From positions 224,261 through 288,260 of the IMG/VR virus record IMGVR_UViG_3300027816_000051: a stretch of DNA of 64,000 bases. One strand, 5' to 3'. Shown here piece by piece: positions 3,775 to 55,115 of the stretch. Position 1 is the stretch's first letter; every line of letters starts with the position of its first letter. The notes under the pieces were generated by a model. It was given only the letters and a program-made list of their open reading frames with translations. It had not been told where the DNA came from and did not search any database. A program made the translations under genes and the position numbers.

Positions 3775-3775
3775 A

Positions 3776-11302: not shown

Positions 11303-11409
11303 ATTTTTATTAATTGGTTTGTGGGTACAAAGATATAACAATTTTAAAATAATACAAGTGAAAGTTATTCACATCCTGAATGTGGATTTTGACCACCCTG
11401 AACCTGACG

Positions 11410-11680: not shown

Positions 11681-11710
11681 TGGAATATTCAAAAAGATAT
11701 CATAACTTCG
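11679..11710 (+). promoter_or_regulatory. Bacteroidota-type promoter
   Basis: TTTG (11679)-N20-TAACTTCG (11703). Confidence 0.6.
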
Positions 11711-11732
11711 TATCAACATAAGAAAAGAAGTC

Positions 11733-12350: not shown

Positions 12351-12352
12351 CC

Positions 12353-13936: not shown

Positions 13937-14042
13937 GTTTTTTTTCTATATAAATATCATAATCAGTCAGAAATTATGAACCTCGTACGCCGGAACCGGG
14001 AATTTTCTTAAAACGTAATATTTATTGGAAATAAAGATTAAT

Positions 14043-41114: not shown

Positions 41115-42371
41115 ATGTCTGATAATGGAAAAATTTTTATACAGATGGCTGCGTACAGGGATAAAGAACTGTTACCAACACTTAGAGATTGTATAGAGAA
41201 AGCTAAACACCCCGAAAATCTTGTATTTTCAATTGCATGGCAACATTCACAAGATGATGAGTGGGATAATTTAGATGAATTTAAATGTGACCCTCGATTT
41301 AAAATAATCGATATTAATTATACAAAAGCTAAAGGACCTTGTTGGGCTAGATACATGTTACAGCAACAATATGGTGGTGAACAATATACATTACAATTGG
41401 ATTCCCATCATAGGTTTATTCAAAATTGGGATTCGGAGTTGATAGAGGAATTAACAAAATTACAAGACAAGGGTTATAAAAAACCCATGTTAACAGGATA
41501 TATTCCATCATACGAACCCGAAAATGAACCAAATGGTAGATTGAATGTTCCGTGGAAAATGAATTTTGATAGATTCAGTCCCGATGGTAACGTACATTTT
41601 TTACCATCATCAATCGATGATTTTAAAGAAAGAGTTGAACCTGTCAGGGCTAGATTTTATTCGGCACACTTTTGTTTTACACTTGGACAATTTGCATTAG
41701 AAGTACAACACGACCCTGATTATTATTTCCATGGTGAGGAAATATCAATTTCTGTTAGGGCATATACTCATGGGTACGACCTCTTTCATTTACATAGGGT
41801 GATTATATGGCACTACTACACAAGAAAAGGTTCAACAAAACAATGGGATGATGACCCTGTATGGCACAAAAGAAACGAATATAGTCACTATAAAAATAGA
41901 AAACTATTTGGAATGGAAGACGATGGGAATAGTATCGATTTTGGTGATTTCGGGTTTGGTAAAAACAGAACATTAGACCAATACGAAAGGTATGCGGGTA
42001 TTTCATTTAGTAAGAGAGCCATCCAAAAATTTACATTGGAATATAATCACCCGCCAAATCCACATATTGAGGACCAAGTTGAGTATGATAATTCGTTTAC
42101 ATTCCAATTTAAACATTGTATTGATGTGGGATTCCATGACGTTCCACATGATGACTACACATTTTGGGCTGTAGCATTTTTAGATGAAAATGATAATGAA
42201 ATTTTTAGACAAGATGCTGGTTCTGATGAAATTAAGAGAATGAAGAATGACCCTGATGGGTATTGTAAAATATGGAGGACGTTTGAAACGACCGTAAAAC
42301 CTCATAAATGGATTGTTTGGCCATGTTCCGAAAAACATGGGTTTGGTGAAAGATTAGAAGGAAAACTTTAA
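41115..42371 (+). CDS. GT60-like GlcNAc-transferase (Skp1 Gnt1-like)
   Basis: IFIQMAAYRD, GPCWAR, QLDSHHRF, FHGEEI, WHYY. Confidence 0.85.
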   Translation: MSDNGKIFIQMAAYRDKELLPTLRDCIEKAKHPENLVFSIAWQHSQDDEWDNLDEFKCDPRFKIIDINYTKAKGPCWARYMLQQQYGGEQYTLQLDSHHRFIQNWDSELIEELTKLQDKGYKKPMLTGYIPSYEPENEPNGRLNVPWKMNFDRFSPDGNVHFLPSSIDDFKERVEPVRARFYSAHFCFTLGQFALEVQHDPDYYFHGEEISISVRAYTHGYDLFHLHRVIIWHYYTRKGSTKQWDDDPVWHKRNEYSHYKNRKLFGMEDDGNSIDFGDFGFGKNRTLDQYERYAGISFSKRAIQKFTLEYNHPPNPHIEDQVEYDNSFTFQFKHCIDVGFHDVPHDDYTFWAVAFLDENDNEIFRQDAGSDEIKRMKNDPDGYCKIWRTFETTVKPHKWIVWPCSEKHGFGERLEGKL

Positions 42372-42381
42372 AATATAAAAT

Positions 42382-43647
42382 ATGGAAAAAATACTAGTTC
42401 ATTTACCCGCATACAGAGAACCTGAATTAATACCAACAATAAAAAGTGCTTTGGAAAATGCACAATACCCCGAAAGAATACATTTTGGTATATGTAGACA
42501 ATTTAATCCTGATGATGGATTTGATAATGTTGATGAATATAGAGATGACCCAAGATTTAAGATTAAGGACATTCTATATACTGAAGCAAAAGGACTAGCA
42601 TATGCTAGGTCGGTAATAAACGAAGAATTATTAACCGATGAAGATTTTGTTTGTCAATTAGACTCACATCATAGATTCTCGGAAAATTGGGATTCTAAAT
42701 TAATCGGGTGGTACAATCAGTTAAAGGAAGAAGGTAATAATCCATTAATTTGTGGTTACCTACCATACTACGACCCTTTCAATGACCCTGAGAAAAGAGT
42801 ACAGGAACCATGGTTTTCAAGAGCTGAGTGTTTTTACCCTCACGGTACCATTTTTATACGACCATCAGCGGTCCGTGGTGGGTGGCAACATTTAACAAAA
42901 CCATACCCCGCTAGATTCATAAGTGGACATTTTTGTTTTGGTCCGAATAAATGGGCTAAAGAAGTTAGACACGACCCAAATATCTTTTTTGCTGGTGAAG
43001 AGATTAATCTATCAGTAAGGAGTTTTACTTATGGGTATGATTTGTTCCACCCACATGAGGTTGTAATATGGCACGCAACTATGAGAGAAGAAAGGGCGGG
43101 TATGTTGGTTTGGGATGACCAACACAAAAGAGGTGAAGGAACTTGGTGGAAAGGAAATGATATTGCTCGGTCTAGAATTAGACAATTATTAGGTACAGAA
43201 GATAATGGTCACGATTTGGGACCGTATGGTTTAGGTACGGTTAGAACAATACGTGATTATGAAAAATACGCTGGTATACATTTCAAAAAAAGAGCGTTTC
43301 AAAAATGGACCATTGATGATAAATTTCCACCAAATCCTCAATATGAGAATGAAGAAGAATGGGAAAATTCATTTACAAAATCTTTTTATTATTTGGTGAA
43401 TGTTGAAAGACAAGATTTACCTGAAAATGACTATGATTTTATTTTGATAGCGTTTGACGATGAAAATGGTATATCAATGTTTAACAAATATATTGACGGA
43501 CATAATTTAACAAGATTTTTAAATGGAGACGGTCCAATTCATTATGAAGAAATGTTCCATGTGGAAACAGAACCATCTAGAGTGGTTTATTGGGCACACT
43601 CACCTGAAAGAGGTTGGGTAGAAAAAAAACAAATAAATTTAAAATAA
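42382..43647 (+). CDS. GT60-like GlcNAc-transferase, paralog 2
   Basis: AYREPE, QLDSHHRF, FAGEEI; shared C-terminal domain. Confidence 0.85.
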   Translation: MEKILVHLPAYREPELIPTIKSALENAQYPERIHFGICRQFNPDDGFDNVDEYRDDPRFKIKDILYTEAKGLAYARSVINEELLTDEDFVCQLDSHHRFSENWDSKLIGWYNQLKEEGNNPLICGYLPYYDPFNDPEKRVQEPWFSRAECFYPHGTIFIRPSAVRGGWQHLTKPYPARFISGHFCFGPNKWAKEVRHDPNIFFAGEEINLSVRSFTYGYDLFHPHEVVIWHATMREERAGMLVWDDQHKRGEGTWWKGNDIARSRIRQLLGTEDNGHDLGPYGLGTVRTIRDYEKYAGIHFKKRAFQKWTIDDKFPPNPQYENEEEWENSFTKSFYYLVNVERQDLPENDYDFILIAFDDENGISMFNKYIDGHNLTRFLNGDGPIHYEEMFHVETEPSRVVYWAHSPERGWVEKKQINLK

Positions 43648-43657
43648 AAAAAAATAT

Positions 43658-44356
43658 ATGAGCAAATTTGTAGAATTACTAAAAGCATGTGACAATTTTA
43701 AGAAGACCACATACTATTGGGACCACGATGTCCTATTACCACACGAGAATAGTATTAGAAATTATCCGGCGCCTTGGATTATAAAGACTATTGAGTTATT
43801 AAAAATCATTGACGGAAAAGTCGTTGTTGAAATTGGTTCAACGAGGAGAGAATTGACACAAAACTGTATTTCATATCACGATAATTCAATGAAATTAGAA
43901 AGTAAAGACGGTCCTGCATGTTGTCAGGATGGTCACTCAACTTATTATTGGGCGAGAGAGGGTTTTGAAGTTCATACGGTAGATGTTGATGAATATTGTA
44001 AAACTCAAATTGAAAATGAATACAAATATCATATTCATGAACCTATACCTGATAATTTACACATACATATACCTCAAGACGGTATTGAATTTCTTAAAAA
44101 TTTTCAAGGTAAAATTGATTTATTGTTTTTAGACGGATGGGATAAAGGTACCCACGAATACGCGGAAAAACATTTAGAAGCGTTCATGGCCGCTCAAGAT
44201 AAATTATCCGATTTACATTTAATATCAATTGATGATACCGATTTTGACACTGAATCAGCGGGTAAGGATAAATATTTGACACCATACCTACTTGAAAATG
44301 GATATATCAGAGTACTTTGGGGTAGACAAACAGTTTATGTAAAAAATAGACCATAA
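43658..44356 (+). CDS. Class I SAM-dependent methyltransferase-like protein
   Basis: VVEIGS...IDLLFLDG...ISIDD. Confidence 0.75.
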   Translation: MSKFVELLKACDNFKKTTYYWDHDVLLPHENSIRNYPAPWIIKTIELLKIIDGKVVVEIGSTRRELTQNCISYHDNSMKLESKDGPACCQDGHSTYYWAREGFEVHTVDVDEYCKTQIENEYKYHIHEPIPDNLHIHIPQDGIEFLKNFQGKIDLLFLDGWDKGTHEYAEKHLEAFMAAQDKLSDLHLISIDDTDFDTESAGKDKYLTPYLLENGYIRVLWGRQTVYVKNRP

Positions 44357-44382
44357 AAGATAATTTTAGATAATTATTTGAT

Positions 44383-45744
44383 ATGGTAAAGTTAATTATA
44401 TTTGATTTAGATGGTGTTTTAGTTGAAACAAAAGAACTACATTTTAACACTTTGAATAATGCTCTGAGAGAAGTTGATGAAAAATATGTAATAACTTCTG
44501 AGGAACATTTATCGATATATGATGGATTAAAGACAACAGAAAAATTAGAGATATTAACTAAATATAAAGGTTTACCTGTTGAATTATATAATAAAATTTG
44601 GAGAAGAAAACAGGAGCTAACGATTGATGAATTAAATCATTTAGAAAAGGATAATAGACTTATTGAAATATTTAAAGAATTAAAACGTAAAAAATACAAA
44701 CTTATATGTTGTTCTAATTCTGTTAGGTCCACATTATTTGTTGTACTTTCTAAATTAGGTTTAATTGAATTTTTAGATTTAGTACTATCAAACGAAGATG
44801 TTAAAACAGGTAAACCCCATCCTGAAATTTATTGGAAGGGGATAAGTACTATGGGGGTTTTACCTGAGGAGTCTTTAATAATTGAAGATTCACCTTACGG
44901 TCTTCAATCCGCAAATAGAACATCGGCTCATGTACTTAGAGTTAATAATCCGAATTCATTAACACTTGAAACAATAGAAAAAAAATTGGAACAGATTAAA
45001 GAAAAAAATAAATTACAGTGGCCGGGTAATGATTTAAATATTCTCATCCCAATGGCGGGTGCAGGAAGTAGATTTCAAAAAGCTGGATTTAAATTACCTA
45101 AACCATTAATTGATGTTTTAGGTGAACCGATGATAAAAAAAGTAATAGATAGTCTTAATATCCAAGGTAATTACATTTTTATAGTACAAAAAGAACATCG
45201 CGAAAAATACAATTTGGATGTGATGTTAAATTTAATTGTACCTGGATGTAAAATAATAGAAACGGACGGTTTAACTGAAGGTGCCGCATGTACAACATTA
45301 TTAGCCAAAGACTTAATCAATAATGATAGTCCTTTATTGATTGCAAATTCAGACCAATACATTGAATGGGATAGTGTAAACTTCATGTATCTTATGAATG
45401 AGCAATCGTTAGATGGGGGTATATTAACATTTACTGCAGATAACCCAAAATGGTCTTTTGTTAGAACAAATGACACGGGATTAGTGACCGAAGTTGCTGA
45501 GAAGAAACCAATATCCAATCAAGCAACTGTAGGTGTTTATTATTGGGGTAAAGGTTCAAATTACGTAGAATGTGCCGAAAAAATGATTAGTAAAAATATT
45601 AGAGTAAACGATGAGTTTTATGTTTGTCCTGTTTACAATGAATCAATAGAAAATGGTGATAGAATTAAACCATACAATATTCAAAATATGTATGGTTTAG
45701 GCACACCTGAAGATTTAGAGAATTTTATTAATTTGAAAAAATGA
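44383..45744 (+). CDS. HAD phosphatase fused to sugar-phosphate nucleotidyltransferase (BcbE-like)
   Basis: FDLDGVL, KPHP, IEDS; IPMAGAGSRF, PKPLI, GAACT, NSDQ, EFYVCP, GLGTPEDL. Confidence 0.88.
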   Translation: MVKLIIFDLDGVLVETKELHFNTLNNALREVDEKYVITSEEHLSIYDGLKTTEKLEILTKYKGLPVELYNKIWRRKQELTIDELNHLEKDNRLIEIFKELKRKKYKLICCSNSVRSTLFVVLSKLGLIEFLDLVLSNEDVKTGKPHPEIYWKGISTMGVLPEESLIIEDSPYGLQSANRTSAHVLRVNNPNSLTLETIEKKLEQIKEKNKLQWPGNDLNILIPMAGAGSRFQKAGFKLPKPLIDVLGEPMIKKVIDSLNIQGNYIFIVQKEHREKYNLDVMLNLIVPGCKIIETDGLTEGAACTTLLAKDLINNDSPLLIANSDQYIEWDSVNFMYLMNEQSLDGGILTFTADNPKWSFVRTNDTGLVTEVAEKKPISNQATVGVYYWGKGSNYVECAEKMISKNIRVNDEFYVCPVYNESIENGDRIKPYNIQNMYGLGTPEDLENFINLKK

Positions 45745-46187
45745 TACTGATTTCACATAGAGGAAACATTGATGGTCCCAACGATGTAAGGGAAAATTCA
45801 CCATTTTATATTATGGAGGCCATTACCATGGGTTTTGATGTTGAGGTTGATATTTGGTATAAAAATGGTGATTTGTGGTTAGGTCACGACAAACCCGAAT
45901 ATAAAACATCAGAAGAGTGGTTAAAAGAAAGAAGTAATAATTTATGGATACATTGTAAGAATGTTGAGTCACTTTGTTTTTTTAATTCTTTGTCATATAA
46001 GTTTAATTATTTTTGGCATCAAGAGGATGTCGTGACCTTAACGTCATTAAATTTTATGTGGGTATATCCAGGAAAACAACCAATAAAAAATAGTATAGCA
46101 GTACTACCAGAAATCTTTAATGATGATATTAAAGATTGTACAGGTATATGTAGTGATTTTATAAAAAAATATAAAGAAGGGAATTAA
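45741..46187 (+). CDS. Short GDPD/PLC-like phosphodiesterase
   Basis: ISHRGN, DVEVDIW, LGHD, WIHCKN, GICSD. Confidence 0.75.
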   Translation: MILISHRGNIDGPNDVRENSPFYIMEAITMGFDVEVDIWYKNGDLWLGHDKPEYKTSEEWLKERSNNLWIHCKNVESLCFFNSLSYKFNYFWHQEDVVTLTSLNFMWVYPGKQPIKNSIAVLPEIFNDDIKDCTGICSDFIKKYKEGN

Positions 46188-46188
46188 A

Positions 46189-46992
46189 ATGAGAGTGGCG
46201 GTATGTTATTCGGGAATGTTTAGAAACTTTAACGAGACTATAGAAAATCACAAAGAGCATTTATTCTCGAAATATGATTGTGATGTTTATTTTAGTTTTT
46301 GGGATGTCTATGGTGATGGTGGGTTTACGTCAAAATATAGTACAAGTAAAAGAAAAACTTGGGATTTTAAAACAAATCAATTTATTGAAACAGAAGTATC
46401 AAACGATAAAATATTACAATCGGACATTGATGATGTTTTAACAAGATTAAATCCTGTAAAATATGAATTTGAGGAGTTTTCAAATTTTGAACCACTTTTT
46501 AATGCGAAATCCGAATTGATGAATCTTGTTTATAAAGAAAAACATGATTGGTTACCTCATTTACCAAATATTATGTCAATGTACTATAAAGTATATCGTT
46601 GTAATTACTTGGTTAAGTATTCAGGTAGAGAGTATGATTGTGTTTTAAGGTTACGACCTGATTTAATGTTTCATGATTTTGGATTAGAATTATTGAAACC
46701 TGAAACAAATACAATCAACATTAATTCATGGGGTTCATTTGAAAAAAATTATCAGGACATGTTTATATATGGTGATACAATTTCAATGGGTAAATTATCT
46801 AGATTATATTTTAATTTAGAAAAAATATGGCATGAGGCAGGAAGAAAATCAGGAAATGAACACGTTTTGTATTATTATCTTAATAATGTTACAGATGTAA
46901 ATATCAATATGGATACCTCGATTGAATTTTATAAAGTAAATAGAGGTCAATTAGGTTCCATGGCTGGATATTATTTACCCAACACACAATAA
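46189..46992 (+). CDS. Putative glycosyltransferase (VAVCYSG..R family), paralog 1
   Basis: VAVCYSGMFR...SMYYKV...YDCVLRLRPD. Confidence 0.65.
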   Translation: MRVAVCYSGMFRNFNETIENHKEHLFSKYDCDVYFSFWDVYGDGGFTSKYSTSKRKTWDFKTNQFIETEVSNDKILQSDIDDVLTRLNPVKYEFEEFSNFEPLFNAKSELMNLVYKEKHDWLPHLPNIMSMYYKVYRCNYLVKYSGREYDCVLRLRPDLMFHDFGLELLKPETNTININSWGSFEKNYQDMFIYGDTISMGKLSRLYFNLEKIWHEAGRKSGNEHVLYYYLNNVTDVNINMDTSIEFYKVNRGQLGSMAGYYLPNTQ

Positions 46993-46998
46993 AAAAAG

Positions 46999-47697
46999 AT
47001 GATAACATTAAAAAATTTAGAAATAACAGAAACACCTCAAGAATTCTTTGATGCATTTAATAAATTCATGTTAAGTGGTGACAAAAAAGTCTTCAATAAA
47101 TTGATTGCGCGAACATTATTATACAATGAGGTTAAGGATATTCCTGGTGACATTGTAGAATGTGGTGTTTTTAAAGGAACGGGATTGTATACATTTTTAA
47201 AATTAAGAAATCTATATAACCCTAATTCTGTTAAAAAAGTAATCGGATTTGATTTTTTTGATACTGAAAATTTAATCAATTCAATCACAGATAAATTCGA
47301 TAAGGAAACAATGAACACTCTATTTGAGGGTAGAAACTTTAGTCACGAAAATTCATTTAAAGATAATTTTAGAAATCAAATTTTATCTCATGGTTTTTCT
47401 GAATCAGAATTTGAATTAGTTGAGGGTGATGTTTCATCAACAACAAAGAAATTTTCACAAGAAAATCCTGGATTTAAAATATCATTACTTTACATGGATT
47501 TGGACTTGGAGGAGCCGACTTATAACACTTTAGTCAATTTGTGGGACAATATCACTAAGGGTGGTATCGTTGTATTTGATGAATATGGGTACCATAAATG
47601 GAGTGAATCTAAAGCGGTAGATAGGTTTATCCAAGAAAAGAATTTAGAATTAAAAACATTAAACTATTCGGCACCAACCGCATACATTAAAAAATAA
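46999..47697 (+). CDS. TylF/MycF-family O-methyltransferase-like protein
   Basis: GDIVECGVFKG, GFDFF, MDLDLEEPT, GGIVVFDEY. Confidence 0.82.
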   Translation: MITLKNLEITETPQEFFDAFNKFMLSGDKKVFNKLIARTLLYNEVKDIPGDIVECGVFKGTGLYTFLKLRNLYNPNSVKKVIGFDFFDTENLINSITDKFDKETMNTLFEGRNFSHENSFKDNFRNQILSHGFSESEFELVEGDVSSTTKKFSQENPGFKISLLYMDLDLEEPTYNTLVNLWDNITKGGIVVFDEYGYHKWSESKAVDRFIQEKNLELKTLNYSAPTAYIKK

Positions 47698-47700
47698 TTT

Positions 47701-48390
47701 ATGCAAGTAGTAATATTGGCGGCAGGTCGTGGTACAAGATTTAACGGGTCAGAATTTGATAATCCTAAACCTTTAATAGAATGGGATGGTAAAACCATGA
47801 CTAATCACGTAATAGAAAACTTTAAGGGTGATAACGTAAAGATTATTCTAATTAAAAGGGACGAACACCCAATACATCACAAAGATGTAAACATTATCAA
47901 TATTGATTGGATTACTGAAGGCCCAGCATGTACTGCACATCTGAGTAAAGATATTGTTGACATGGATTCTGAATTAGTAATTGTGAACTGTGACCAAATA
48001 ATTTTAGATTGGGACAAAACGATGTTTTTAAATTTTGCAAGAAACTTTGATGCTGTGATTGGTTGTTTCATTTCAAATAAACCAAATAATTCATATGTTA
48101 AATTAAATAATGAAAATTTGGTTACCGAAGTAAAGGAAAAAGAAGTCATCTCAAATATCGCAACGAATGGTTTACATTATTGGAAAAAAGCGAGATATTT
48201 TTTTGAATCATTTGAAGAAATGTTCACTAATAAAGATACAACCAATAAAGAATATTACGTCGCACCAACTTATAACTACCTAATTAAAAATGGGTATAAG
48301 GTTGGTATCTTTATGTTTAACCAACATCACCCAATTGGGACACCTGAAGATTTAAAAAAATACCTAAGCATAAAGAAAACACAAATATGA
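47701..48390 (+). CDS. Sugar-phosphate nucleotidyltransferase (BcbE-like), paralog 2
   Basis: ILAAGRGTRF, PKPLI, GPACT, NCDQ, EYYVAP, IGTPEDL. Confidence 0.85.
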   Translation: MQVVILAAGRGTRFNGSEFDNPKPLIEWDGKTMTNHVIENFKGDNVKIILIKRDEHPIHHKDVNIINIDWITEGPACTAHLSKDIVDMDSELVIVNCDQIILDWDKTMFLNFARNFDAVIGCFISNKPNNSYVKLNNENLVTEVKEKEVISNIATNGLHYWKKARYFFESFEEMFTNKDTTNKEYYVAPTYNYLIKNGYKVGIFMFNQHHPIGTPEDLKKYLSIKKTQI

Positions 48391-48710
48391 AAATAACAAA
48401 ATTTGACGAATACAAAGGTGGATGGTTCATTGGTGATTTTGAGCCTGCCGCGTTTAAAACAAAGGATTTTGAGGTTTGTTTTAAACACCACACCAAAGGT
48501 GAAAAATGGGACACTCACTATCACAAACAAGGGACTGAAATAAATTACTTGGTTAAAGGTAAAATGATGATACAAAATACCGAATTAAATGAGGGAGATA
48601 TTTTTATTCTTTACCCATACGAAGTTGCAGACCCTGAATTTTTAGAAGATTGTACCGTATTAATTGTTAAAACACCATCAGTAAAAGGAGATAAATTTAT
48701 AATACCATGA
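48387..48710 (+). CDS. Cupin domain protein
   Basis: GGWFIGDFEP; HYHK..TE..Y...GK. Confidence 0.8.
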   Translation: MKITKFDEYKGGWFIGDFEPAAFKTKDFEVCFKHHTKGEKWDTHYHKQGTEINYLVKGKMMIQNTELNEGDIFILYPYEVADPEFLEDCTVLIVKTPSVKGDKFIIP

Positions 48711-49936
48711 TTAACATATTCACAAAAGATATTGATTTAGAAAAGTACTTTGTTGTTACATACTTTTTAGAATCAAAAACATCATTAAGAGAGGCTGCAT
48801 GGAATTTGGCTATTGGTCAAAGTATTGGTAACCCTAACAATAGAAGCGTGTGGGAAACTGAAGAAATGTTTTTGAACCATAGTTGTTTTATAATGGAGGA
48901 TGAAGATTATTTAAAATCTTTAAAAGAAGGTATTGTAAAATTTGCATTCCCATTGTCAAACATTAATTTGGAAGAAGATGGTATTTCACAAATACTCTGT
49001 CATATAGCTGGAGGTCAAGTAGATATTTTAGAAATTCAAAAATGTCAAATACTAAATGTTGAATTACCTGAAAAAATAGAAGTTAAATTTAAATTAAAAC
49101 CCGCATTTGGTATAGATGGTTTTAGGGAATTTAATGGTGTAAACGGTAAACCTTTTTTTGGTGGTATAATTAAACCCAAAGTTGGTATGTCACCTGAAGT
49201 TTTGTTAGAAGCCGTAAAAGAAATGGTACAAGGTGGTGTTAACTTCATTAAAGAAGATGAGTTATTAGCCAATCCCGACCATTGTCCTCTTGAAAAAAGA
49301 GTTCCATTAATCACTAATTGGTTAAGAGAAAACGCTCCAAATGTGATTTATTGTTTTTGTATTAATGGTGATAGTCCATATGCACTAGAAAGAGCAAAAT
49401 TTGTTTCAGATAATGGTGGTAATGGTATACACATAAATGTTTGGAGTGGATTGGGGGTGTATAGAGCAATCAGAAAACAAAATCCTAATTTGTGGATACA
49501 TTTCCAAAAAAGTGGTGATAAATTTTTTACAGATAAAAGAGCACCATTTCACATTTATTGGCCGGTTATCTGTAAAATCGCTGGTTGGTCTGGTGTTGAT
49601 TCTATACACGCTGGTATGATTGGTGGTTACATGAATCAAGACGAAAAAGAATTAGAAGATTCTTTAAATGTTTTATGGAATTACAATATTGTACCCGCAT
49701 TAAGTTGTGGTATGCATCCCGGATTGGTACAATACATAAATGAATTGTTAAATAGTTTTGATTGGATGGCTAATGTTGGTGGTGCAATGCACGGACACCC
49801 AATGGGTACTCTATCAGGTGGTTTAGCTATGAAACAAGCAATTAACAAAGAATTCGACAAAATAGAATATAAAACAGCCATTGAAAAGTGGGGAAATAAA
49901 GAATTTAATCCCGATTTGGCTTACAGATTTTTTTAA
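48707..49936 (+). CDS. RuBisCO-like protein (Form IV, non-carboxylating)
   Basis: IIKPKVG, FIKEDE, DSIHAG, ALSCG, GGAMHGHP; equivalents of E60, N123, H294, K334 appear substituted. Confidence 0.9.
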   Translation: MINIFTKDIDLEKYFVVTYFLESKTSLREAAWNLAIGQSIGNPNNRSVWETEEMFLNHSCFIMEDEDYLKSLKEGIVKFAFPLSNINLEEDGISQILCHIAGGQVDILEIQKCQILNVELPEKIEVKFKLKPAFGIDGFREFNGVNGKPFFGGIIKPKVGMSPEVLLEAVKEMVQGGVNFIKEDELLANPDHCPLEKRVPLITNWLRENAPNVIYCFCINGDSPYALERAKFVSDNGGNGIHINVWSGLGVYRAIRKQNPNLWIHFQKSGDKFFTDKRAPFHIYWPVICKIAGWSGVDSIHAGMIGGYMNQDEKELEDSLNVLWNYNIVPALSCGMHPGLVQYINELLNSFDWMANVGGAMHGHPMGTLSGGLAMKQAINKEFDKIEYKTAIEKWGNKEFNPDLAYRFF

Positions 49937-49942
49937 AATAAA

Positions 49943-50641
49943 ATGAGAATATTAATTACAAAATACCATAAAGCCGGTGATGTAATCGGATGGGAGAATG
50001 GAGTCGATAAACTTACAAACGGTGAGGATGTTTATATTGATGTAGAAGAGCAACCAACAACAATACCTGGTTTAAAATTTAAACCTCAAATGATTGGTTA
50101 TGATAATGATAATGAAGATTATTTTTGGAAGTTTTGTACTGCCGAAGTCTCTCAACAAAGTTACGATTTAGTAAAAGAAATCACAAAGGATTATATGACA
50201 CATGGTATATTAGAAATTGGAGTTTCAAGAAATTCTGATGGTTCTTTTTGCCACGCAATGTTGTTTAATAAGCCTGACCACATACCTTATTTAGGTGTCG
50301 ATTTAGATGATAAATCTTATTTAAATAACTCATCTAAAAAAATACATACCATTCAAGAAAATTCATATAACCAAGAATTGATTAGAAATTACATGAAAGA
50401 AATTGGTATAGATAAAATATCAATTCTTTTTATTGATGGTCACCATTCGGTGAACACAGTTATTAATGATTGGTTATATTCAGATTTATTATCTGATAAT
50501 GGTATTGTTATTTTTCACGACACTAATTTTCATACAGGACCTACAATCTTTATCGAAGCAATTGACAGGAATCAATATGATGTGGTGAAATATTTTGAAG
50601 AGTATAACGATTACGGAGTGTCTATTGCGTATAAAAAATAA
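49943..50641 (+). CDS. Class I SAM-dependent methyltransferase (Methyltransf_24-like)
   Basis: ILEIGV...LFIDGHH...GIVIFHD. Confidence 0.8.
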   Translation: MRILITKYHKAGDVIGWENGVDKLTNGEDVYIDVEEQPTTIPGLKFKPQMIGYDNDNEDYFWKFCTAEVSQQSYDLVKEITKDYMTHGILEIGVSRNSDGSFCHAMLFNKPDHIPYLGVDLDDKSYLNNSSKKIHTIQENSYNQELIRNYMKEIGIDKISILFIDGHHSVNTVINDWLYSDLLSDNGIVIFHDTNFHTGPTIFIEAIDRNQYDVVKYFEEYNDYGVSIAYKK

Positions 50642-50644
50642 TTT

Positions 50645-51484
50645 ATGAAAGTAGCGGTTTGTTATTCTGGAATGATTAGAGGGTTTTTAGGGAATATTGA
50701 AAACCACAAAGAATTTTTATTGTCAAAATATGATTGTGATGTTTACCTCAGTTTTTGGGATGTTTATGGATTTGGTTATTTACCATTTTCAAGATATAAA
50801 TCTGATAAACACATTAGATTCAACATTGAAGAAAATAAGTGTGAAGTAATTCCAATTATTGAGTCTGACTTGATTAGTGAATCAATTAAAAAAGAAATAA
50901 TACATAAATTAAATCCTAAAAATTACATATTTGAATCATTCAAATCATATGAACCAACACTACAAGAAAGGGAAAAACCTTTAATTGAAAAATATGAATA
51001 CAATGAAACAAATTGTAATATCGGTCAACTATTGGCTTGGAATACCTTAGGTGGTTATTATAGAATATACAAATGTGGTGAAATGGTTAAAAATTCTAAC
51101 ATTAATTACGATGTTGTTGTTAGAATGAGACCTGATAGTATTTTAGAAAATACGGTGATTTTACAAAAACCGGAAAATAGTATCATATATGGTAATCAAC
51201 ACGCATCTTGGGGTAATGACACAATAAATGATTCTTTATTATATGGTAATATGGAATCGATGGAAATCTATAGAAATATGCACAATCATTTAATAGACAT
51301 ATTTCACAAGACCCAAGGACCCGGTAACGCTGCTGAACATTTATTGTATGTTTATTTAACAAGTATGGGTTTAAAAATAAACAAAGATTTATATGCACCA
51401 ACACACAGTTATCACAATTATAGAGAAAAAGAAAAGTCTGAAGAATTACAAAATTCAATTTGGTTTAAAGAATTAGGAAAATAA
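50645..51484 (+). CDS. Putative glycosyltransferase (VAVCYSG..R family), paralog 2
   Basis: VAVCYSGMIR...YDVVVRMRPD. Confidence 0.65.
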   Translation: MKVAVCYSGMIRGFLGNIENHKEFLLSKYDCDVYLSFWDVYGFGYLPFSRYKSDKHIRFNIEENKCEVIPIIESDLISESIKKEIIHKLNPKNYIFESFKSYEPTLQEREKPLIEKYEYNETNCNIGQLLAWNTLGGYYRIYKCGEMVKNSNINYDVVVRMRPDSILENTVILQKPENSIIYGNQHASWGNDTINDSLLYGNMESMEIYRNMHNHLIDIFHKTQGPGNAAEHLLYVYLTSMGLKINKDLYAPTHSYHNYREKEKSEELQNSIWFKELGK

Positions 51485-52287
51485 TGAAAGTTGCTGTTTG
51501 TTATTCTGGTATGTTGAGGGGATTTGAAGATTTTATAAAAAATCATCATGACTTTTTATTGTCAAAATATGACTGCGATATCTACTTGAATTTTTGGGAC
51601 GTATATGGGTATGGTGTTCAACCATATTCTAAGTATACATCCAAAAATCATTATCGATTTACAGGATTTCATGGTGAAAATAAAAATAAAATCGAAGTCA
51701 TACCAATAACAGAATCTGAATTAATAGACGATGAAACAAAAGATAGGATAATATCAAAACTAAAACCAAAAGATTTTGTTTTTGACTCATTTGTTTCAAT
51801 GGAGCCATTTTTTGAAGAAAAGGAAAAATATTTTTACAAAAGGTGGGATTTAGATTCTATGAGTTTGCAATTACCATCACTATTAATGATGAATGTCATG
51901 GGAATGTATTATCGAATATATAAATGTGGTGAAATGGTACAAAATTCTGGTGTAAAATATGATATTGTTGTTAGAAATAGGACTGACACGACCTTTACAA
52001 GCGAATTGATTTTACAAAAACCCGAGCCAAATACAATTTACACTAATTCAGTACAATCTTGGCCCGAAGCAGTAAATGATACACTACTTTATGGTAACAT
52101 GGATGTAATGTGGAAATATCAAAAAATGTATCTTGATTTATTTTCACTTTGGGATGAAGTGGCGGTGTGGAATTCTGCAGAACATTTATTATACAAGTAT
52201 TTAAAGACAAACAATTTTATAATAAATTCAGATTTGTCAATGATGACACATAATGAGAATACATACAAACTAAGGAAATCGAAATGA
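51484..52287 (+). CDS. Putative glycosyltransferase (VAVCYSG..R family), paralog 3
   Basis: VAVCYSGMLR...YDIVVRNRTD; closely similar to 50645. Confidence 0.65.
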   Translation: MKVAVCYSGMLRGFEDFIKNHHDFLLSKYDCDIYLNFWDVYGYGVQPYSKYTSKNHYRFTGFHGENKNKIEVIPITESELIDDETKDRIISKLKPKDFVFDSFVSMEPFFEEKEKYFYKRWDLDSMSLQLPSLLMMNVMGMYYRIYKCGEMVQNSGVKYDIVVRNRTDTTFTSELILQKPEPNTIYTNSVQSWPEAVNDTLLYGNMDVMWKYQKMYLDLFSLWDEVAVWNSAEHLLYKYLKTNNFIINSDLSMMTHNENTYKLRKSK

Positions 52288-53195
52288 ATTTTATAAATAG
52301 ACTATTCAATAATAAAAATGATAAAGACATGATTCAAAATTTGAGATTTTTAATTAATACTCATGATAAAAACTTGTCTTTAGCGGAATTGTCTTTAAAA
52401 CATTTTTTTAAACATAATAAAAGAGATGATTTAAAAATAACAATTGTAAGTAATAAATTTAATACGGAAGATTTAAAATATTCCGATAAAGTCACATATT
52501 ATAGTAGTAATATTAACTTACATTGTCAAGGATATCATTTTAAAGAAACTATGCTTAGTGCTTTAAAAGAAATAAGTGAGGATTACATTTTCTTTTTATT
52601 AGATGATTATTTTTTTATTGAAGAAATAAAATACCATGATTTAAACGATGCATTGAATTTAATTAAATGTGAAAATATTGACTATTTTGGTTTTGATGAT
52701 ATTGGTGGTATTTTAAAACTTAGCGATTTTGAAAAATTAAATAGTTCTTGTGAAAGTAATATTAAGGATGAACTTTATTTAAGACATAAGGATTATCAAT
52801 ATTTGTTTAGCGTACAACCATGTATTTGGAAAAGAAAATCACTAATTGAATTATTGGAAAGTCATGAAAATATATCATTACATGATTTGGATGAGACGAA
52901 ACCATATATTAGAGAGTCCGGTTTAAAATTTAAAAGTACAATGTCAGGATTAAGGTCCTGTTTTGATTATGCTTTTAATATTGATTTACAAAAAAGACCT
53001 GATGATTATTATATTATCGCATACACTGAGATAGTAAGACACGGGTGTTTTAACATACCTGAAAACGGTAAACCAGTAAGTCCAAATGACTATAGTGTAA
53101 GATTTACATATAACTTAATTGAAGAGGAGGATTTGGGTAGTAAAAAAGAATTTAGACACCTGTTACCACCTTCTCTACACAAACTAAACAATTAA
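52284..53195 (+). CDS. Putative GT-A glycosyltransferase
   Basis: YIFFLLDDYF; SVQPCIWKR. Confidence 0.6.
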   Translation: MNFINRLFNNKNDKDMIQNLRFLINTHDKNLSLAELSLKHFFKHNKRDDLKITIVSNKFNTEDLKYSDKVTYYSSNINLHCQGYHFKETMLSALKEISEDYIFFLLDDYFFIEEIKYHDLNDALNLIKCENIDYFGFDDIGGILKLSDFEKLNSSCESNIKDELYLRHKDYQYLFSVQPCIWKRKSLIELLESHENISLHDLDETKPYIRESGLKFKSTMSGLRSCFDYAFNIDLQKRPDDYYIIAYTEIVRHGCFNIPENGKPVSPNDYSVRFTYNLIEEEDLGSKKEFRHLLPPSLHKLNN

Positions 53196-53196
53196 A

Positions 53197-54222
53197 ATGA
53201 AAGTAACTTGTTATTTTGAAAGAGGTGCGTTACATTGGTCTAATATCAGTGCACATAATTTTGTTTATAACAAATTGGTGGAGATGTATCCTGAGATTGA
53301 ATTTAATGCGGTACACACCGCGTGTGATATAATCACACAACCTGATGGTTCCCAACAATCAATGAGAAGTTATACAAACTATACCGGACCCGCTTGTAGA
53401 TATGGTCCTTTTTGGATGGTTATTCAAAACGTAGAAAACAAAAAATATTTCGTTGTTTCATATTGGGACAAATTAAATGATTTTTTTCACACCAACTGGG
53501 ATACAGAAAACTGTGTTGAGATTTTTACAAGTATTGGGTTACATAAGGACGACATTTTTTATAAAAAACTTGATTTACCATATACTCCAACTTCCTTTGT
53601 TGGTTCTACTTTGGAAAATGAAAGAAGAATTGAAAATCTATATTCTAATAGGTTATCAATGAACAAGACCAGTATTATCGATAAGACAAAGAGGAAATTA
53701 GGTCTACATAATATAAAAGATTCTTATGGTAGGTTGTATCCTGATAAATTAATTTTTAGAGGTTATACTTACCTTTTTAGAAAACACTTAATTAATGACA
53801 GTAGATTTGACATTAGAGTGGATAAAGTAGATGAACCAACCTATTTAAGTGAATTAGATTCCTATGCTTTAAATTTTAGTCCAAATGGTGCCGGTGAAAT
53901 ATGTTTTAGAGACTTTGAAATTATGGGTTTAGGTTCCGCACTGTTTAGACAAAAGTTAGGTGTGGAGTTTCACAATAAATTAATACCAAACTACCATTAT
54001 ATATCTGTAGATTTTGATGATATACCCACTAACACCGACTATGTTACATATTGGTACAAATTAGCAGATAGGATTCACTCAAGATTTGAAGAAGTTAAAG
54101 GTGATTATGATTTTATTGACTTTGTTGCAGAAAATGGTAGAAAATGGTACGAGGAAAACGGTACCGCGGAAAAAAACGCAGAAATAATTGTAAATCTAAT
54201 TGATTTTAATAAAATTAAGTAA
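53197..54222 (+). CDS. Putative GT-B glycosyltransferase (GT90/exostosin-like C-terminus)
   Basis: LIFRG...SPNGAGEICFRDFE...LIPNYHYI...AENGRKWY. Confidence 0.6.
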   Translation: MKVTCYFERGALHWSNISAHNFVYNKLVEMYPEIEFNAVHTACDIITQPDGSQQSMRSYTNYTGPACRYGPFWMVIQNVENKKYFVVSYWDKLNDFFHTNWDTENCVEIFTSIGLHKDDIFYKKLDLPYTPTSFVGSTLENERRIENLYSNRLSMNKTSIIDKTKRKLGLHNIKDSYGRLYPDKLIFRGYTYLFRKHLINDSRFDIRVDKVDEPTYLSELDSYALNFSPNGAGEICFRDFEIMGLGSALFRQKLGVEFHNKLIPNYHYISVDFDDIPTNTDYVTYWYKLADRIHSRFEEVKGDYDFIDFVAENGRKWYEENGTAEKNAEIIVNLIDFNKIK

Positions 54223-54273
54223 ATAGACCATTTATTTTCAGACTAAAAATTATTAAATTTTGAAAAAATACTT

Positions 54274-55107
54274 ATGAATAACCCAAATATTGTTGTCACA
54301 TTTACCACAATACCTTCAAGATTAATCAGTAATCACCAATTCGACATGAGATATTGTTTGGATTCGTTGTTAAATCAATCCTATGAGGGAGAATATGAGG
54401 TACATCTAAACATTCCATATGTTTGTAAAAAAATAAACACTGAGTACGTTATACCAGAATGGTTGACAGAACTTGAAACTTCAAACAAAAGATTAAAAAT
54501 TTTTAGAACCGAAGACTACGGACCACTAACAAAATTATTACCAACTTTAGAGAGAATTGAAGAGGATGAAACTATAATTATTGTTGTTGATGATGATTTG
54601 GTTTACCATTCGGATATGGTAAAAGAACATGTAAACAATCAAAGTAAATGGTTAGATTCTCCTGTTGGGTATGATGGTATGCGTTCTAGAAATGAAGACG
54701 GGACTTTCTCAAATTTCTTTGGTGACACGAGGGACCATTATTACTCAGGTACTCACAGAGATTCTAGAGTTGATATCCTACAACATTACAAAACAATCTC
54801 GTACAAAAGAAGATATTTTGGTGACGACTTTAAGGAGTTTGTTGAAAAATATTACACATGGAACGATGACCTTTTTGTTTCGGCGTATTTTGCGAGTAAA
54901 AAAATTGATAGATACACCACATATTATGAAAACGATGTGGTTTACGGACCTTATGATGAATGGTTAGCAAATGTTGGTAAAACATTCCCATTAATTCAAA
55001 GTACACATCACGAATCCATTGAAGGGTGTAACCTTTTTAGGAGAGATAACGATGATGATAATTCTTCACAATTATATAAATTCATCGATTCAGGATATCA
55101 AAAATAA
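54274..55107 (+). CDS. GT2-like glycosyltransferase
   Basis: VVTFTTIPSR, DYGPLTKLLP, VVDDD, NDD. Confidence 0.7.
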   Translation: MNNPNIVVTFTTIPSRLISNHQFDMRYCLDSLLNQSYEGEYEVHLNIPYVCKKINTEYVIPEWLTELETSNKRLKIFRTEDYGPLTKLLPTLERIEEDETIIIVVDDDLVYHSDMVKEHVNNQSKWLDSPVGYDGMRSRNEDGTFSNFFGDTRDHYYSGTHRDSRVDILQHYKTISYKRRYFGDDFKEFVEKYYTWNDDLFVSAYFASKKIDRYTTYYENDVVYGPYDEWLANVGKTFPLIQSTHHESIEGCNLFRRDNDDDNSSQLYKFIDSGYQK

Positions 55108-55115
55108 TAAAAAAC

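What the first reader, a model, noticed from the sequence alone, without database searches (positions are those of the whole stretch)
44383..49936. RuBisCO-like protein inside a phage sugar-nucleotide pathway
Seen: the RLP is coupled by 4-nt overlaps to a cupin and a nucleotidyltransferase, downstream of a HAD-nucleotidyltransferase fusion, GDPD-like, GT-like and TylF-like genes. By eye it keeps K175/K177 (KPK), the carbamate/Mg site (KEDE), H327, S379 and G403/G404, but has E60G, N123G, H294Q, R295K and K334Y. Known: Form IV RLPs do not fix CO2 and catalyse enolisation-based isomerisation, tautomerisation or (de)carboxylation of sugar-phosphate-like substrates; BcbE-like proteins occur in capsule loci. 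Inference: a biosynthetic RLP making an unusual ketose or branched sugar phosphate that is NDP-activated, methylated and transferred to a phage glycan. It should not be read as a carbon-fixation gene.
Basis: partly seen in the sequence, partly recalled or inferred. Interest (0 to 1): 0.85.

Follow-up and report, generated by a model that had tools for sequence, protein, structure and literature searches.

The report
RuBisCO-like enzyme in phage sugar-activation module
A large freshwater phage carries a non-carbon-fixing relative of RuBisCO that is almost always encoded next to a sugar-activating enzyme, in phages and in bacteria such as SAR11 and Legionella, which points to an unrecognised biosynthetic job for this enzyme family in making surface sugars.

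Summary
Window 48707-49936 (+) encodes a 409-aa RuBisCO-like protein (RLP). It is joined by ATGA overlaps to a 107-aa cupin and a 229-aa nucleotidyltransferase, inside a 16-kb same-strand run of glycosyltransferase, methyltransferase, HAD-nucleotidyltransferase and GDPD-like genes.

The RLP belongs to the divergent "phage/Beckwithbacteria" clade reported by Jaffe et al. 2018, whose function is unknown. New here:
- The 19-site signature GNPGIKKKDEQ[K/R]xHYSGGG holds, bar rare single-site exceptions, down to 29% identity.
- A nucleotidyltransferase lies within 3 kb of the RLP in 45 of 47 viral and 30 of 31 cell-labelled loci. The cupin and a stripped-down GDPD-like barrel usually accompany it.
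- RLP-nucleotidyltransferase and nucleotidyltransferase-cupin fusions exist.
- The same module sits in a complete Pelagibacter chromosome and in Legionella isolates, in L. nautarum beside LicD.

Best reading: an enolising isomerase or epimerase that supplies a rare phospho-sugar for nucleotide activation and glycan decoration. It is not a carbon-fixation gene. Substrate, product and target glycan are unresolved.

The parts
41115..42371 (+). Glycosyltransferase (GlcNAc-transferase family)
   Evidence: PF11397, E=3.1e-72. First gene of the same-strand run.
42382..43647 (+). Second PF11397-type glycosyltransferase
   Evidence: PF11397, E=7.1e-48, plus weak GT2.
43658..44356 (+). Methyltransferase-like protein (weak call)
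   Evidence: Methyltransf_24, E=0.002, below cutoff.
44383..45744 (+). HAD (beta-phosphoglucomutase-like) fused to a sugar-phosphate nucleotidyltransferase
   Evidence: HAD_2 at 1.1e-28. NCBIfam beta-PGM family at 9e-26 and RmlA/GlmU-type NTase on residues 221-445. Homologous to gp358 of the cultured Synechococcus phage B3.
45741..46187 (+). Stripped-down GDPD-like (PLC-like phosphodiesterase) barrel, 148 aa. Core member of the module.
   Evidence: Invariant HRG, EN, ExD, GHD and HxK motifs in 41 homologues. PDB profile hit to GDPD 7e0v at E=1.8e-4. AF2 pLDDT 97, and the top Foldseek PDB hits are predominantly GDPDs, although weak (E about 0.04). Atlas neighbours are viral. Within 3 kb of the RLP in 36/47 viral groups.
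46189..46992 (+). GT-like protein, DUF7796-related viral family, paralogue 1
   Evidence: No Pfam hit. Atlas structural neighbours are DUF7796, 'capsular polysaccharide biosynthesis' and glycosyltransferase-family clusters. 36% identical to 51484-52287. The family is near the RLP in 26/55 groups.
46999..47697 (+). TylF-type O-methyltransferase
   Evidence: PF05711, E=7.3e-13.
47701..48390 (+). Nucleotidyltransferase (sugar-phosphate NTase fold). Universal partner of the RLP.
   Evidence: PF12804 at 3.8e-10 and PF00483 at 1.3e-8. Full-length weak matches to GlmU-N/RmlA/AglF/HddC models, none reaching cutoff. Best PDB hit is 4evw, an uncharacterised NDP-sugar pyrophosphorylase, at 3.5e-11. ATGA overlap with the cupin.
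48387..48710 (+). Small metal-type cupin, 107 aa
   Evidence: Invariant H44, H46 and E51 in 35 homologues. PDB profile hits are quercetinase, Cupin_2, a 113-aa 'mannose-6-phosphate isomerase' (7zvm) and KdgF. Occurs fused to the NTase in other viruses. ATGA overlap with the RLP.
48707..49936 (+). RuBisCO-like protein, phage/Beckwithbacteria clade, non-carboxylating
   Evidence: PF00016 at 1.1e-31. Model TM 0.84 to Form III RuBisCO. Signature GNPGIKKKDEQKDHYSGGG. Monophyletic clade with SH-aLRT 100.
49943..50641 (+). Methyltransferase-like protein (Methyltransf_24 / CmcI-like)
   Evidence: E=2.4e-5, just below cutoff. Homologues directly follow the RLP in 14/55 groups.
50645..52287 (+). Two further paralogues of the GT-like DUF7796-related family (50645-51484 and 51484-52287)
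   Evidence: Same strict BLAST family as 46189-46992. Pairwise E=7e-47.
52284..55107 (+). Three unknown genes (52284-53195, 53197-54222, 54274-55107)
   Evidence: 52284-53195 and 53197-54222 have no Pfam or NCBIfam hit. 54274-55107 was scanned only in the pooled Pfam/PHROGs scans, which report no per-protein result. All three are found only in close relatives of this phage.
55116..57488 (+). Three-domain TylF methyltransferase + HtrL_YibB + GT2 protein. Last gene of the run.
   Evidence: PF05711 at 1.1e-25, PF09612 at 7.4e-12, PF00535 at 1.2e-5.

Best explanation
The 409-aa protein is a Form-IV-type RuBisCO-like protein of one isofunctional, widely distributed subfamily, defined by the 19-site signature GNPGIKKKDEQ[K/R]xHYSGGG.

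What the active site suggests:
- It keeps the enolisation machinery: the carbamate lysine K201, the Mg ligands D203/E204, and K175/K177.
- It keeps the C1-phosphate cradle (G381, G403, G404) and part of the distal phosphate site (K295, H327).
- It has lost what is needed to add CO2 and cleave (K334Y, N123G, E60G, H294Q).
- I therefore read it as a Mg2+-dependent enolising isomerase or epimerase acting on a phosphorylated keto-sugar.

Proposed pathway:
1. The RLP makes a rare phospho-sugar.
2. That sugar, directly or after aldose-ketose isomerisation by the translationally coupled cupin, is activated to a nucleotide-linked form by the adjacent nucleotidyltransferase.
3. It is then installed on a glycan and O-methylated by the surrounding GDPD-like protein, GT-like proteins and methyltransferases. 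In Legionella a LicD phosphotransferase may do the installing step.

The logic resembles the GDP-mannose route, in which a cupin isomerase and a pyrophosphorylase act together, with the RLP as an added upstream step.

Shown: identity, residue pattern, gene linkage, fusions and taxonomic spread. Inferred: the reaction type, the order of steps, the nucleotide used, the role of the GDPD-like protein, and whether the glycan belongs to the virion or to the infected cell.
For: RLP identity and lost carboxylase residues.

Signature: identical at 18 of 19 positions in nearly all full-length members from 100% down to 29% identity. The 18 exclude the H298-equivalent position. Rare exceptions are H327Q (P0126, P0166, L089) and G404S/A (P0132, P0134, L119, L125). 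It holds in viral and cellular genomes, so there is one conserved catalytic function under selection.

Linkage: an NTase lies within 3 kb of the RLP in 45/47 dereplicated viral groups and 30/31 cell-labelled loci. The cupin is present in 43/47 viral groups, the GDPD-like protein in 36/47, and all three in 33/47 (layouts).

Fusion proteins linking the steps: RLP-NTase (P0122, 667 aa), and NTase-cupin (about 350 aa).

Translational coupling by ATGA overlaps.

Variable flanks are typical nucleotide-sugar tailoring genes: SDR epimerase/dehydratase in 19/55 groups, DegT aminotransferase in 7, FkbM/TylF methyltransferases, and GTs.

Cellular contexts:
- A Pelagibacteraceae single-cell genome (SAG AG-891-C19): GT17, GDPD-like, NTase, RLP, NTase, GT61, SDR and DUF4422, lying between lepA and gyrB. 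The complete Pelagibacter chromosome carries a similar GDPD-like-NTase-RLP unit.
- Legionella nautarum: LicD diverging from RLP-NTase.
- A small contig with RLP, cupin, NTase, GT2, GT2.

The sister RLP (P0135) sits directly after a cupin-type sugar-phosphate isomerase (PF06560) in a sugar operon, so the RLP-cupin pairing is older than the phage clade.
Against: - No substrate or product is identified, and nothing here tests catalysis.
- The cupin cannot be assigned to any isomerase family. hhalign against the sister's PF06560 cupin gives 2% probability, with only the HYH..E motif aligning. Pfam gives only generic cupin hits below cutoff.
- The NTase fold is the sugar-1-phosphate type. Known RLP substrates carry a non-anomeric C1 phosphate, so a mutase or another step may be missing.
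- Most Pelagibacter and all Legionella loci lack the cupin. Legionella also lacks the GDPD-like protein, so those two are not strictly required.
- LicD in Legionella is divergently transcribed and may be unrelated.
- Expression is unproven. Only read-length exact fragments turned up in two metatranscriptomes.
- Many 'cellular' hits are MAG or SAG contigs that could be phage contamination. The complete Pelagibacter chromosome, the Legionella isolates and housekeeping flanks argue against that for those cases.
Confidence: 0.6

Rival explanations
1. Auxiliary salvage or catabolic gene. The RLP and cupin run a methionine-salvage-like or MTA-isoprenoid-shunt-like step (RLP isomerase followed by a cupin enzyme, as in Rhodospirillum rubrum), or a Form-III-like nucleotide-salvage step. 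The purpose would be to re-route host sulfur or pentose metabolism during infection, not to build a glycan.
For: RLP-cupin adjacency mirrors the R. rubrum RLP plus cupin methylsulfurylase and the B. subtilis MtnW/MtnX(HAD)/MtnD(cupin) set (established knowledge; papers listed). The window also has a HAD domain. The closest solved structures and NCBIfam model are Form III RuBisCO. The sister RLP P0135 is in a catabolic-looking operon with an FGGY kinase and transketolase.
Against: No MtnA/K/B/P, DeoA or eIF2B-type isomerase lies next to the module in any locus examined. The MtnW equivalog scores 110 bits against a cutoff of 409. The universal partner is an NTase, including fused forms. Flanks are GTs, methyltransferases, SDRs and aminotransferases. 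HAD is absent from most loci.
Confidence: 0.1
2. The nucleotide-activated product is a donor for phage DNA hypermodification (sugar on modified bases, as in T4-like phages) or for a small soluble molecule, not for a surface glycan.
For: In several viral loci the module is flanked by gp32-like ssDNA-binding and helicase genes. The GT-like proteins are uncharacterised. An NTase plus a PLC/GDPD-type enzyme could make a cyclic phosphate product (inference).
Against: The same module lies in cellular genomes among glycan genes (GT17, GT61, SDR, DUF4422 in a Pelagibacteraceae single-cell genome; LicD in Legionella). The window cluster carries several sugar O-methyltransferase types (TylF, CmcI-like) and PF11397/GT2 transferases.
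Confidence: 0.1
3. The RLP is a non-catalytic remnant, for example a scaffold for the NTase or a decaying acquired gene.
For: Six or seven canonical active-site residues are replaced. No function is known for the clade (PMC6389311).
Against: The remaining catalytic residues and the replacement residues are themselves almost invariant across more than 100 sequences down to 29% identity. The ORF is intact in every locus, and the model is confident.
Confidence: 0.03
4. It is a true CO2-fixing RuBisCO (a carbon-fixation auxiliary gene).
For: Pfam RuBisCO_large hit. JGI pipelines name its homologues 'ribulose-bisphosphate carboxylase large chain'.
Against: K334Y, N123G, E60G and H294Q. There is no PRK or small subunit in the gene run examined (38-60 kb). 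It scores far below every RuBisCO equivalog cutoff.
Confidence: 0.01

Closest known systems
Phage-encoded RLP clade of Jaffe et al. 2018 (Mol Biol Evol, PMC6389311)
   Same: Divergent Form-IV-related RLPs on large (about 200 kb) myovirus-like phage contigs, grouping with Beckwithbacteria (CPR) sequences outside the classical RLP clades. My tree and the Beckwithbacteria MAG locus L102 reproduce this.
   Different: That paper left the function 'unclear'. Its main text does not mention nucleotidyltransferase, cupin or glycosyl genes. The conserved module, the fusions, and the presence in Pelagibacter, Legionella and other cellular genomes are not described there.
R. rubrum / R. palustris DeepYkrW RLP (5-methylthioribulose-1-P 1,3-isomerase) with its cupin partner (MTA-isoprenoid shunt)
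   Same: A non-carboxylating RLP working by enolisation and proton transfer, encoded beside a small cupin that acts on its product. The product is a terminal-phosphate ketose.
   Different: Catabolic or salvage role. Neither of the two RLP-specific NCBIfam equivalogs is approached. The phage cupin found no methylsulfurylase-like structure in the PDB profile search. The partner here is an NTase, in a glycan context.
B. subtilis / Geobacillus MtnW (DK-MTP-1-P enolase) with MtnX (HAD) and MtnD (cupin)
   Same: The same three folds (RLP, HAD, cupin) occur together, and the chemistry is enolisation.
   Different: The MtnW equivalogs score 85-110 bits against cutoffs of 409-514. HAD is not conserved with this RLP. 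There are no other mtn genes.
Form III archaeal RuBisCO (P. horikoshii 2cwx/2d69, T. kodakarensis)
   Same: Best sequence and structure match (E=1.6e-33; TM 0.84; 27% identity). Same two-domain fold, and the carbamate/Mg site is kept.
   Different: The carboxylation and cleavage residues are lost. There is no AMP-pathway partner (DeoA, ribose-1,5-bisphosphate isomerase).
Type II phosphomannose isomerase / GDP-mannose pyrophosphorylase (NTase + C-terminal cupin) and the CDP-arabinitol or CDP-ribitol + LicD routes
   Same: NTase-cupin domain pairing. A nucleotide-activated phospho-sugar or polyol is handed to a transferase. LicD lies next to RLP-NTase in Legionella.
   Different: These are analogies of architecture only. 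No Pfam PF01050 or equivalog match was found. No RLP takes part in any of these known routes.

Membership tests
Bona fide RuBisCO (Forms I-III) | Complete catalytic set: E60, N123, K175, K177, K201, D203, E204, H294, H327, K334 | tested here: not met
   E60G, N123G, H294Q and K334Y (also T65N, W66P, R295K, H298D), from the alignment to 2cwx and a family-wide column read-out.
Bona fide RuBisCO (Forms I-III) | Reaches the curated equivalog score (NCBIfam TIGR03326 type III; PRK04208) | tested here: not met
   152.9 bits against a cutoff of 497, and 131.8 against 438.
RuBisCO large-subunit superfamily / Form IV RLP | Large-subunit fold (N-domain plus TIM barrel), with a Pfam PF00016 match above the gathering score | tested here: met
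   110.7 bits against a cutoff of 30.1. AF2 pLDDT 92, TM 0.79-0.84 to RuBisCO and RLP structures.
RuBisCO large-subunit superfamily / Form IV RLP | Retains the enolisation core (K175, carbamate K201, D203, E204) but lacks carboxylase-specific residues | tested here: met
Phage/Beckwithbacteria RLP clade (Jaffe 2018) | Monophyletic with phage and Beckwithbacteria sequences, apart from the other RLP and RuBisCO forms | tested here: met
   Clade support SH-aLRT 100, separated by a branch with support 99. The Beckwithbacteria MAG locus L102 lies inside the family. The labelled reference RLPs of the classical clades were not available as sequences, so placement relative to the named clades is indirect.
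MtnW / YkrW DK-MTP-1-P enolase | Equivalog score, and mtn gene context | tested here: not met
   110 bits against 409, and 84.8 against 513.6. No mtn genes in any locus.
OiaX-type RLP (3-oxo-isoapionate-4-phosphate decarboxylase) | Equivalog score | tested here: not met
   113 bits against a cutoff of 700.
DeepYkrW RLP (MTRu-1-P isomerase) | Clusters with the R. rubrum RLP, with a cupin methylsulfurylase partner | not tested
   No reference sequence could be brought into the tree. Only the RLP-cupin adjacency is shared. PDB 2qyg (R. palustris RLP2) is a weaker sequence hit (4e-17) than Form III.
IV-GOS RLP clade (Tabita et al. 2007; from memory) | Membership in the clade defined from Global Ocean Sampling reads | not tested
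   The review is not held and no reference sequences are available. The abundance in Pelagibacter and marine or freshwater viromes makes identity plausible but unverified.
Glycerophosphodiester phosphodiesterase (GDPD), for ORF 45741-46187 | HR(G), E-N, E-x-D and H-D catalytic/metal motifs on a TIM barrel | tested here: met
   The motifs are invariant in 41 sequences. The top fold hits are predominantly GDPDs, TM by query about 0.54.
Glycerophosphodiester phosphodiesterase (GDPD), for ORF 45741-46187 | Pfam PF03009 match, and a full-length (about 230-aa) barrel | tested here: not met
   No Pfam or NCBIfam hit. The protein is 148 aa. The PDB profile hit covers only residues 2-52. It is best called GDPD-like.

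The most novel reading that the evidence does not exclude
This RLP subfamily catalyses a reaction not yet known for the RuBisCO superfamily and is its first anabolic member. It would form a rare phospho-sugar that is nucleotide-activated and built into surface glycans. The module would be shared and exchanged between some of the most abundant aquatic bacteria (SAR11), intracellular Legionellales, CPR/DPANN organisms and their large phages. The stripped-down GDPD-like barrel would then act as a new kind of phospho-sugar transferase or cyclase working on the nucleotide-linked product.
Probability: 0.4. Interest if true: 0.85.

Novelty: new variant of a known kind. Interest (0 to 1): 0.72.

Why it matters
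- Assigning functions to RuBisCO-like proteins is a long-standing problem. Every characterised RLP works in catabolism or salvage.
- A conserved, mobile RLP-nucleotidyltransferase module inside glycan gene islands would extend the superfamily to biosynthesis. It would also point to an unknown sugar on the surfaces of SAR11, Legionella species and jumbo phages, where surface glycans govern phage-host recognition.
- It corrects a common annotation error. Pipelines name these genes 'ribulose-bisphosphate carboxylase large chain', so viromes can be misread as carrying carbon-fixation genes.
- The question is directly testable. The same signature enzyme exists in cultured organisms: three Legionella species, Nonomuraea rosea, and a Pelagibacter strain with a complete genome.

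Tried and rejected
1. Giant-virus origin. Several related IMG/VR contigs are labelled GVMAG. However, the window has endolysin, peptidoglycan-binding and tail-fibre families, related loci carry gp32-like genes, and one window protein weakly matches a structural protein of the PA5oct-like jumbo phages. I keep 'phage'.
2. Stop-codon recoding as the cause of the low ORF density in window 1-14000. Recoding TAG or TGA does not lengthen the ORFs in a telling way. Rejected for now.
3. Cultured relatives. tblastn of the RLP against 50,697 GenBank phage records found nothing, and megablast of window 1-14000 found nothing.
4. Cupin identity. PDB profile, Pfam at E<=1, hhalign against the sister's PF06560 cupin, and the Atlas all give only 'generic metal cupin'.
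5. NTase specificity. Only an uncharacterised structural-genomics protein (4evw) is close.
6. Transcription. Public RNA-labelled runs hold only a few read-length fragments, and two of them are probably DNA. Inconclusive.
7. Literature. There is no paper linking RLPs with nucleotidyltransferases, capsules, jumbo phages or cytidylyltransferases in a relevant way. The Tabita 2007 review is not held. 'BcbE' was not checked further.
8. Promoter and terminator scan of 40-59.5 kb. Counts are at or below the shuffled expectation, so it is uninformative.

Full report
**What is there**

Window 41115-57488 is one uninterrupted plus-strand run of 17 genes with short or negative spacers. In order:
- two PF11397 glycosyltransferases
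- a weak methyltransferase-like gene
- a HAD-nucleotidyltransferase fusion (44383-45744)
- a 148-aa gene (45741-46187)
- a 267-aa gene
- a TylF O-methyltransferase
- a 229-aa nucleotidyltransferase (47701-48390)
- a 107-aa cupin (48387-48710)
- the RuBisCO-like protein (48707-49936)
- another methyltransferase-like gene
- two paralogues of the 267-aa gene
- three unknown genes
- a TylF + HtrL_YibB + GT2 fusion

The NTase/cupin and cupin/RLP junctions are ATGA overlaps. The RLP matches PF00016 at 1.1e-31. Its AF2 model (pLDDT 92) superposes on Form III RuBisCO with TM 0.84.

**Residues**

I used the phmmer alignment to P. horikoshii RuBisCO, the positions in the sequence, and my own recall of the spinach motifs for numbering.
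- Kept: K175, K177, K201, D203, E204, H327, S379, G381, G403 and G404.
- Changed: E60G, T65N, W66P, N123G, H294Q, R295K, H298D and K334Y.

By established RuBisCO enzymology, this keeps the enolisation apparatus and the C1-phosphate cradle. It removes the residues needed for CO2 addition and for hydration and cleavage. The best curated model is type III RuBisCO at 153 bits against a cutoff of 497. The MtnW and OiaX equivalogs are equally far from their cutoffs. So it is an RLP that belongs to no characterised RLP equivalog.

**What genome this is**

- The exact protein occurs on at least 32 contigs of up to 288 kb, from many freshwater and lake metagenomes. IMG/VR lists these contigs as viral.
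- The window holds endolysin, peptidoglycan-binding, GH19, tail-fibre, endonuclease VII and DUF932 families. Most of its large proteins have no PHROG or Pfam match.
- One protein weakly resembles a structural protein of the 287-kb PA5oct-like jumbo phages.
- The HAD-NTase and its downstream gene resemble gp358/gp359 of the cultured Synechococcus phage B3.
- No cultured phage among 50,697 records encodes this RLP.

I conclude it is an uncultured freshwater jumbo phage.

**Prior knowledge**

Jaffe et al. 2018 (PMC6389311) already reported about 80 divergent RLPs on phage contigs. Their set included a curated phage of about 200 kb, grouped with Beckwithbacteria sequences, and its function was 'unclear'. 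Their main text does not mention nucleotidyltransferases, cupins or glycosyl genes. My other literature searches found nothing that links RLPs with these partners.

**The family**

- An exhaustive HMMER search of 1.84 billion cluster representatives gives 58 hits at E<=1e-30. Among the full-length hits, clade members run from about 1e-128 down to about 1e-34, while ordinary RuBisCOs and RLPs first appear near 1e-43 and make up most hits from about 1e-30, at 26-33% identity.
- In an IQ-TREE analysis the close clusters form one clade (SH-aLRT 100), separated from everything else by a branch with support 99.
- Across this clade the 19 diagnostic positions read GNPGIKKKDEQ[K/R]xHYSGGG almost without exception, down to 29% identity. 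Both the retained and the replacement residues are fixed, which argues for a single selected catalytic function.

I fetched 80 viral loci, called ORFs, clustered them and dereplicated at 90% RLP identity. Among 47 groups with at least 3 kb on both sides of the RLP:

| Partner within 3 kb | Groups |
|---|---|
| NTase | 45 |
| Cupin | 43 |
| Homologue of the 148-aa gene | 36 |
| All three | 33 |

- Gene order varies and the flanks differ. This is the signature of a functional module rather than inherited synteny.
- Two fusions tie the steps together. One is NTase-cupin (about 350 aa, several lineages). The other is RLP-NTase (P0122, 667 aa).
- Frequent but non-universal neighbours are the 260-aa GT-like family (26/55 groups), SDR epimerase/dehydratases (19/55), methyltransferases and DegT aminotransferases.
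- HAD is rare. In this window it belongs to a second unit, HAD-NTase plus the 148-aa gene. That unit also exists without any RLP in the cultured cyanophage B3.

**The 148-aa gene**

- The alignment of 41 homologues keeps HRG, EN, ExD, GHD and HxK invariant. This is the GDPD / PLC-like phosphodiesterase catalytic set.
- A profile search hits GDPD 7e0v at 1.8e-4 over the first 50 residues.
- The AF2 model (pLDDT 97) is a barrel with few helices. Its best PDB and Swiss-Prot matches are GDPDs at weak scores.
- Its Atlas relatives are almost all viral.

I call it a stripped-down GDPD-like phosphodiesterase or phosphotransferase. Its substrate is unknown.

**The cupin**

It keeps H44, H46 and E51, so it is a metal-type cupin. 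Nothing assigns it to a functional family.

**Not phage-specific**

A scan of one genome per GTDB species found the same RLP, with the identical signature, in these genomes:
- a complete Candidatus Pelagibacter chromosome
- many Pelagibacteraceae single-cell genomes
- Legionella maceachernii, L. nautarum and L. drozanskii
- Nonomuraea rosea
- Turneriella
- a Francisellaceae single-cell genome
- a Verrucomicrobiae chromosome
- Elusimicrobia
- CPR and DPANN MAGs

An NTase is within 3 kb in 30 of 31 loci with adequate flanks.

- In one Pelagibacteraceae single-cell genome (AG-891-C19), the unit GT17, GDPD-like, NTase, RLP, NTase, GT61, SDR and DUF4422 lies between lepA and gyrB.
- In L. nautarum, RLP-NTase diverges from a LicD phosphotransferase gene.
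- The sister of the whole clade (P0135, a bacterial MAG) directly follows a cupin-type sugar-phosphate isomerase. That operon also has a GntR regulator, an FGGY kinase, split transketolase, class II aldolase and an ABC sugar transporter.
- Rooted on that sister, a FastTree places cellular lineages at the base. The viral sequences fall in a derived crown interleaved with cellular ones, and at least five virus/cell switches are forced.
- This suggests a cellular origin with repeated exchange. Caveats are the rooting, long branches, and possible phage contigs inside MAGs.

**Mechanism**

- Shown: a conserved RLP without carboxylase residues, obligatorily linked to a nucleotidyltransferase, usually with a metal cupin and a GDPD-like enzyme, embedded in glycan-tailoring genes.
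- Inferred: the RLP enolises a phosphorylated keto-sugar and reprotonates it to give an epimer or a carbonyl-shifted isomer, as characterised RLPs do. The cupin, by analogy with cupin-type PGI/PMI enzymes and with the NTase-cupin architecture of type II PMI/GDP-mannose pyrophosphorylase, interconverts ketose and aldose phosphate. The NTase activates the product. GT-like proteins, the GDPD-like enzyme or LicD install it, and TylF- and CmcI-type enzymes methylate it.
- Open points: the NTase has the sugar-1-phosphate fold, so a mutase step may be needed (possibly the HAD domain where it is present). The GDPD-like protein could instead transfer a phospho-sugar or form a cyclic phosphate from the nucleotide-linked intermediate. 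The glycan could be on the virion or on the infected cell.

**Rivals**

- A salvage or catabolic role is the main alternative, because RLP + cupin (+ HAD) recalls methionine salvage and the MTA-isoprenoid shunt. It lacks every other pathway gene and does not explain the NTase linkage.
- A DNA-modification donor is possible in phages but fits poorly with the cellular glycan islands.
- A pseudoenzyme or a true carboxylase is very unlikely.

**Expression**

Public RNA-labelled runs contain only a few read-length exact fragments, so this is not informative.

**Verdict**

The core of the interpretation (a biosynthetic, non-carbon-fixing RLP in a nucleotide-sugar pathway) is well supported by comparative genomics. 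The product, its methylation and the target glycan remain hypotheses. That this RLP clade occurs in phages is already known. What appears new is the module, its GDPD-like member, the fusions, and its spread into SAR11 and Legionella.

Noticed in passing
window 1-14000: ORFs of at least 100 aa cover only 66% of this stretch, against 91-95% elsewhere. GC is higher (0.35 against 0.31) and genes run mainly on the minus strand. Recoding TAG or TGA does not clearly restore long ORFs. It is probably a block of many small genes.
   Followed up: partly
window 39162-40226 (-): An IMPDH/GMP-reductase-family gene (PF00478, E=1.8e-43) lies just upstream of the glycan cluster and is conserved with it in close relatives.
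   Followed up: no
window, ORFs of alignment A1 (not pinpointed; pooled scan): Phage hallmark families: endolysin (phrog_181, 1.6e-70), GH19 plus two PG_binding_1 proteins, tail fibre (phrog_3201), endonuclease VII, DUF6915, and an M54/reprolysin-like metallopeptidase. No tRNA genes in the window.
   Followed up: partly
L143 (Synechococcus phage B3, MN695334.1, 226385-228207): A cultured 245-kb cyanophage carries the HAD-NTase (gp358) and the mini-GDPD homologue (gp359) with the same 4-nt overlap. They sit among GT11 and GT25 genes, and there is no RLP or cupin. This gives a culturable system for the GDPD-like/NTase pair.
   Followed up: partly
P0224 (583 aa), P0266 (1265 aa), P0152 and P0161 (about 730 aa), from the representative search: Other RLP or RuBisCO fusions turned up: a TIR domain fused to an RLP, an RLP fused to an APH-type kinase, and eIF2B-type isomerase-RuBisCO fusions with a full catalytic set. 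The TIR-RLP fusion might be a defence-related protein.
   Followed up: no
L067, L068, L071, L073, L079, L085 (IMG/VR contigs named GVMAG): Several RLP-module contigs are binned as giant-virus MAGs. Their module layout (NTase-cupin fusion, mini-GDPD, RLP, TylF) matches the phage ones. They are either mis-binned phages or a true presence in Nucleocytoviricota.
   Followed up: no
window 46189-46992, 50645-51484, 51484-52287: Three paralogues of a viral DUF7796-related GT-like family lie in one cluster. Atlas structural neighbours include viral proteins that fuse this domain to PRK/uridine-kinase-family, sulfotransferase or GT92 domains, and Campylobacterota DUF8374 proteins.
   Followed up: partly
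L087 (MAG GCA_023488455.1, contig JAMDDV010000006.1): The sister RLP (signature GPLSIKKKDEQRDHYSGGG) sits in a sugar-utilisation operon with a cupin-type PGI, split transketolase, an FGGY kinase and class II aldolase. It may be a tractable clue to the ancestral substrate.
   Followed up: partly
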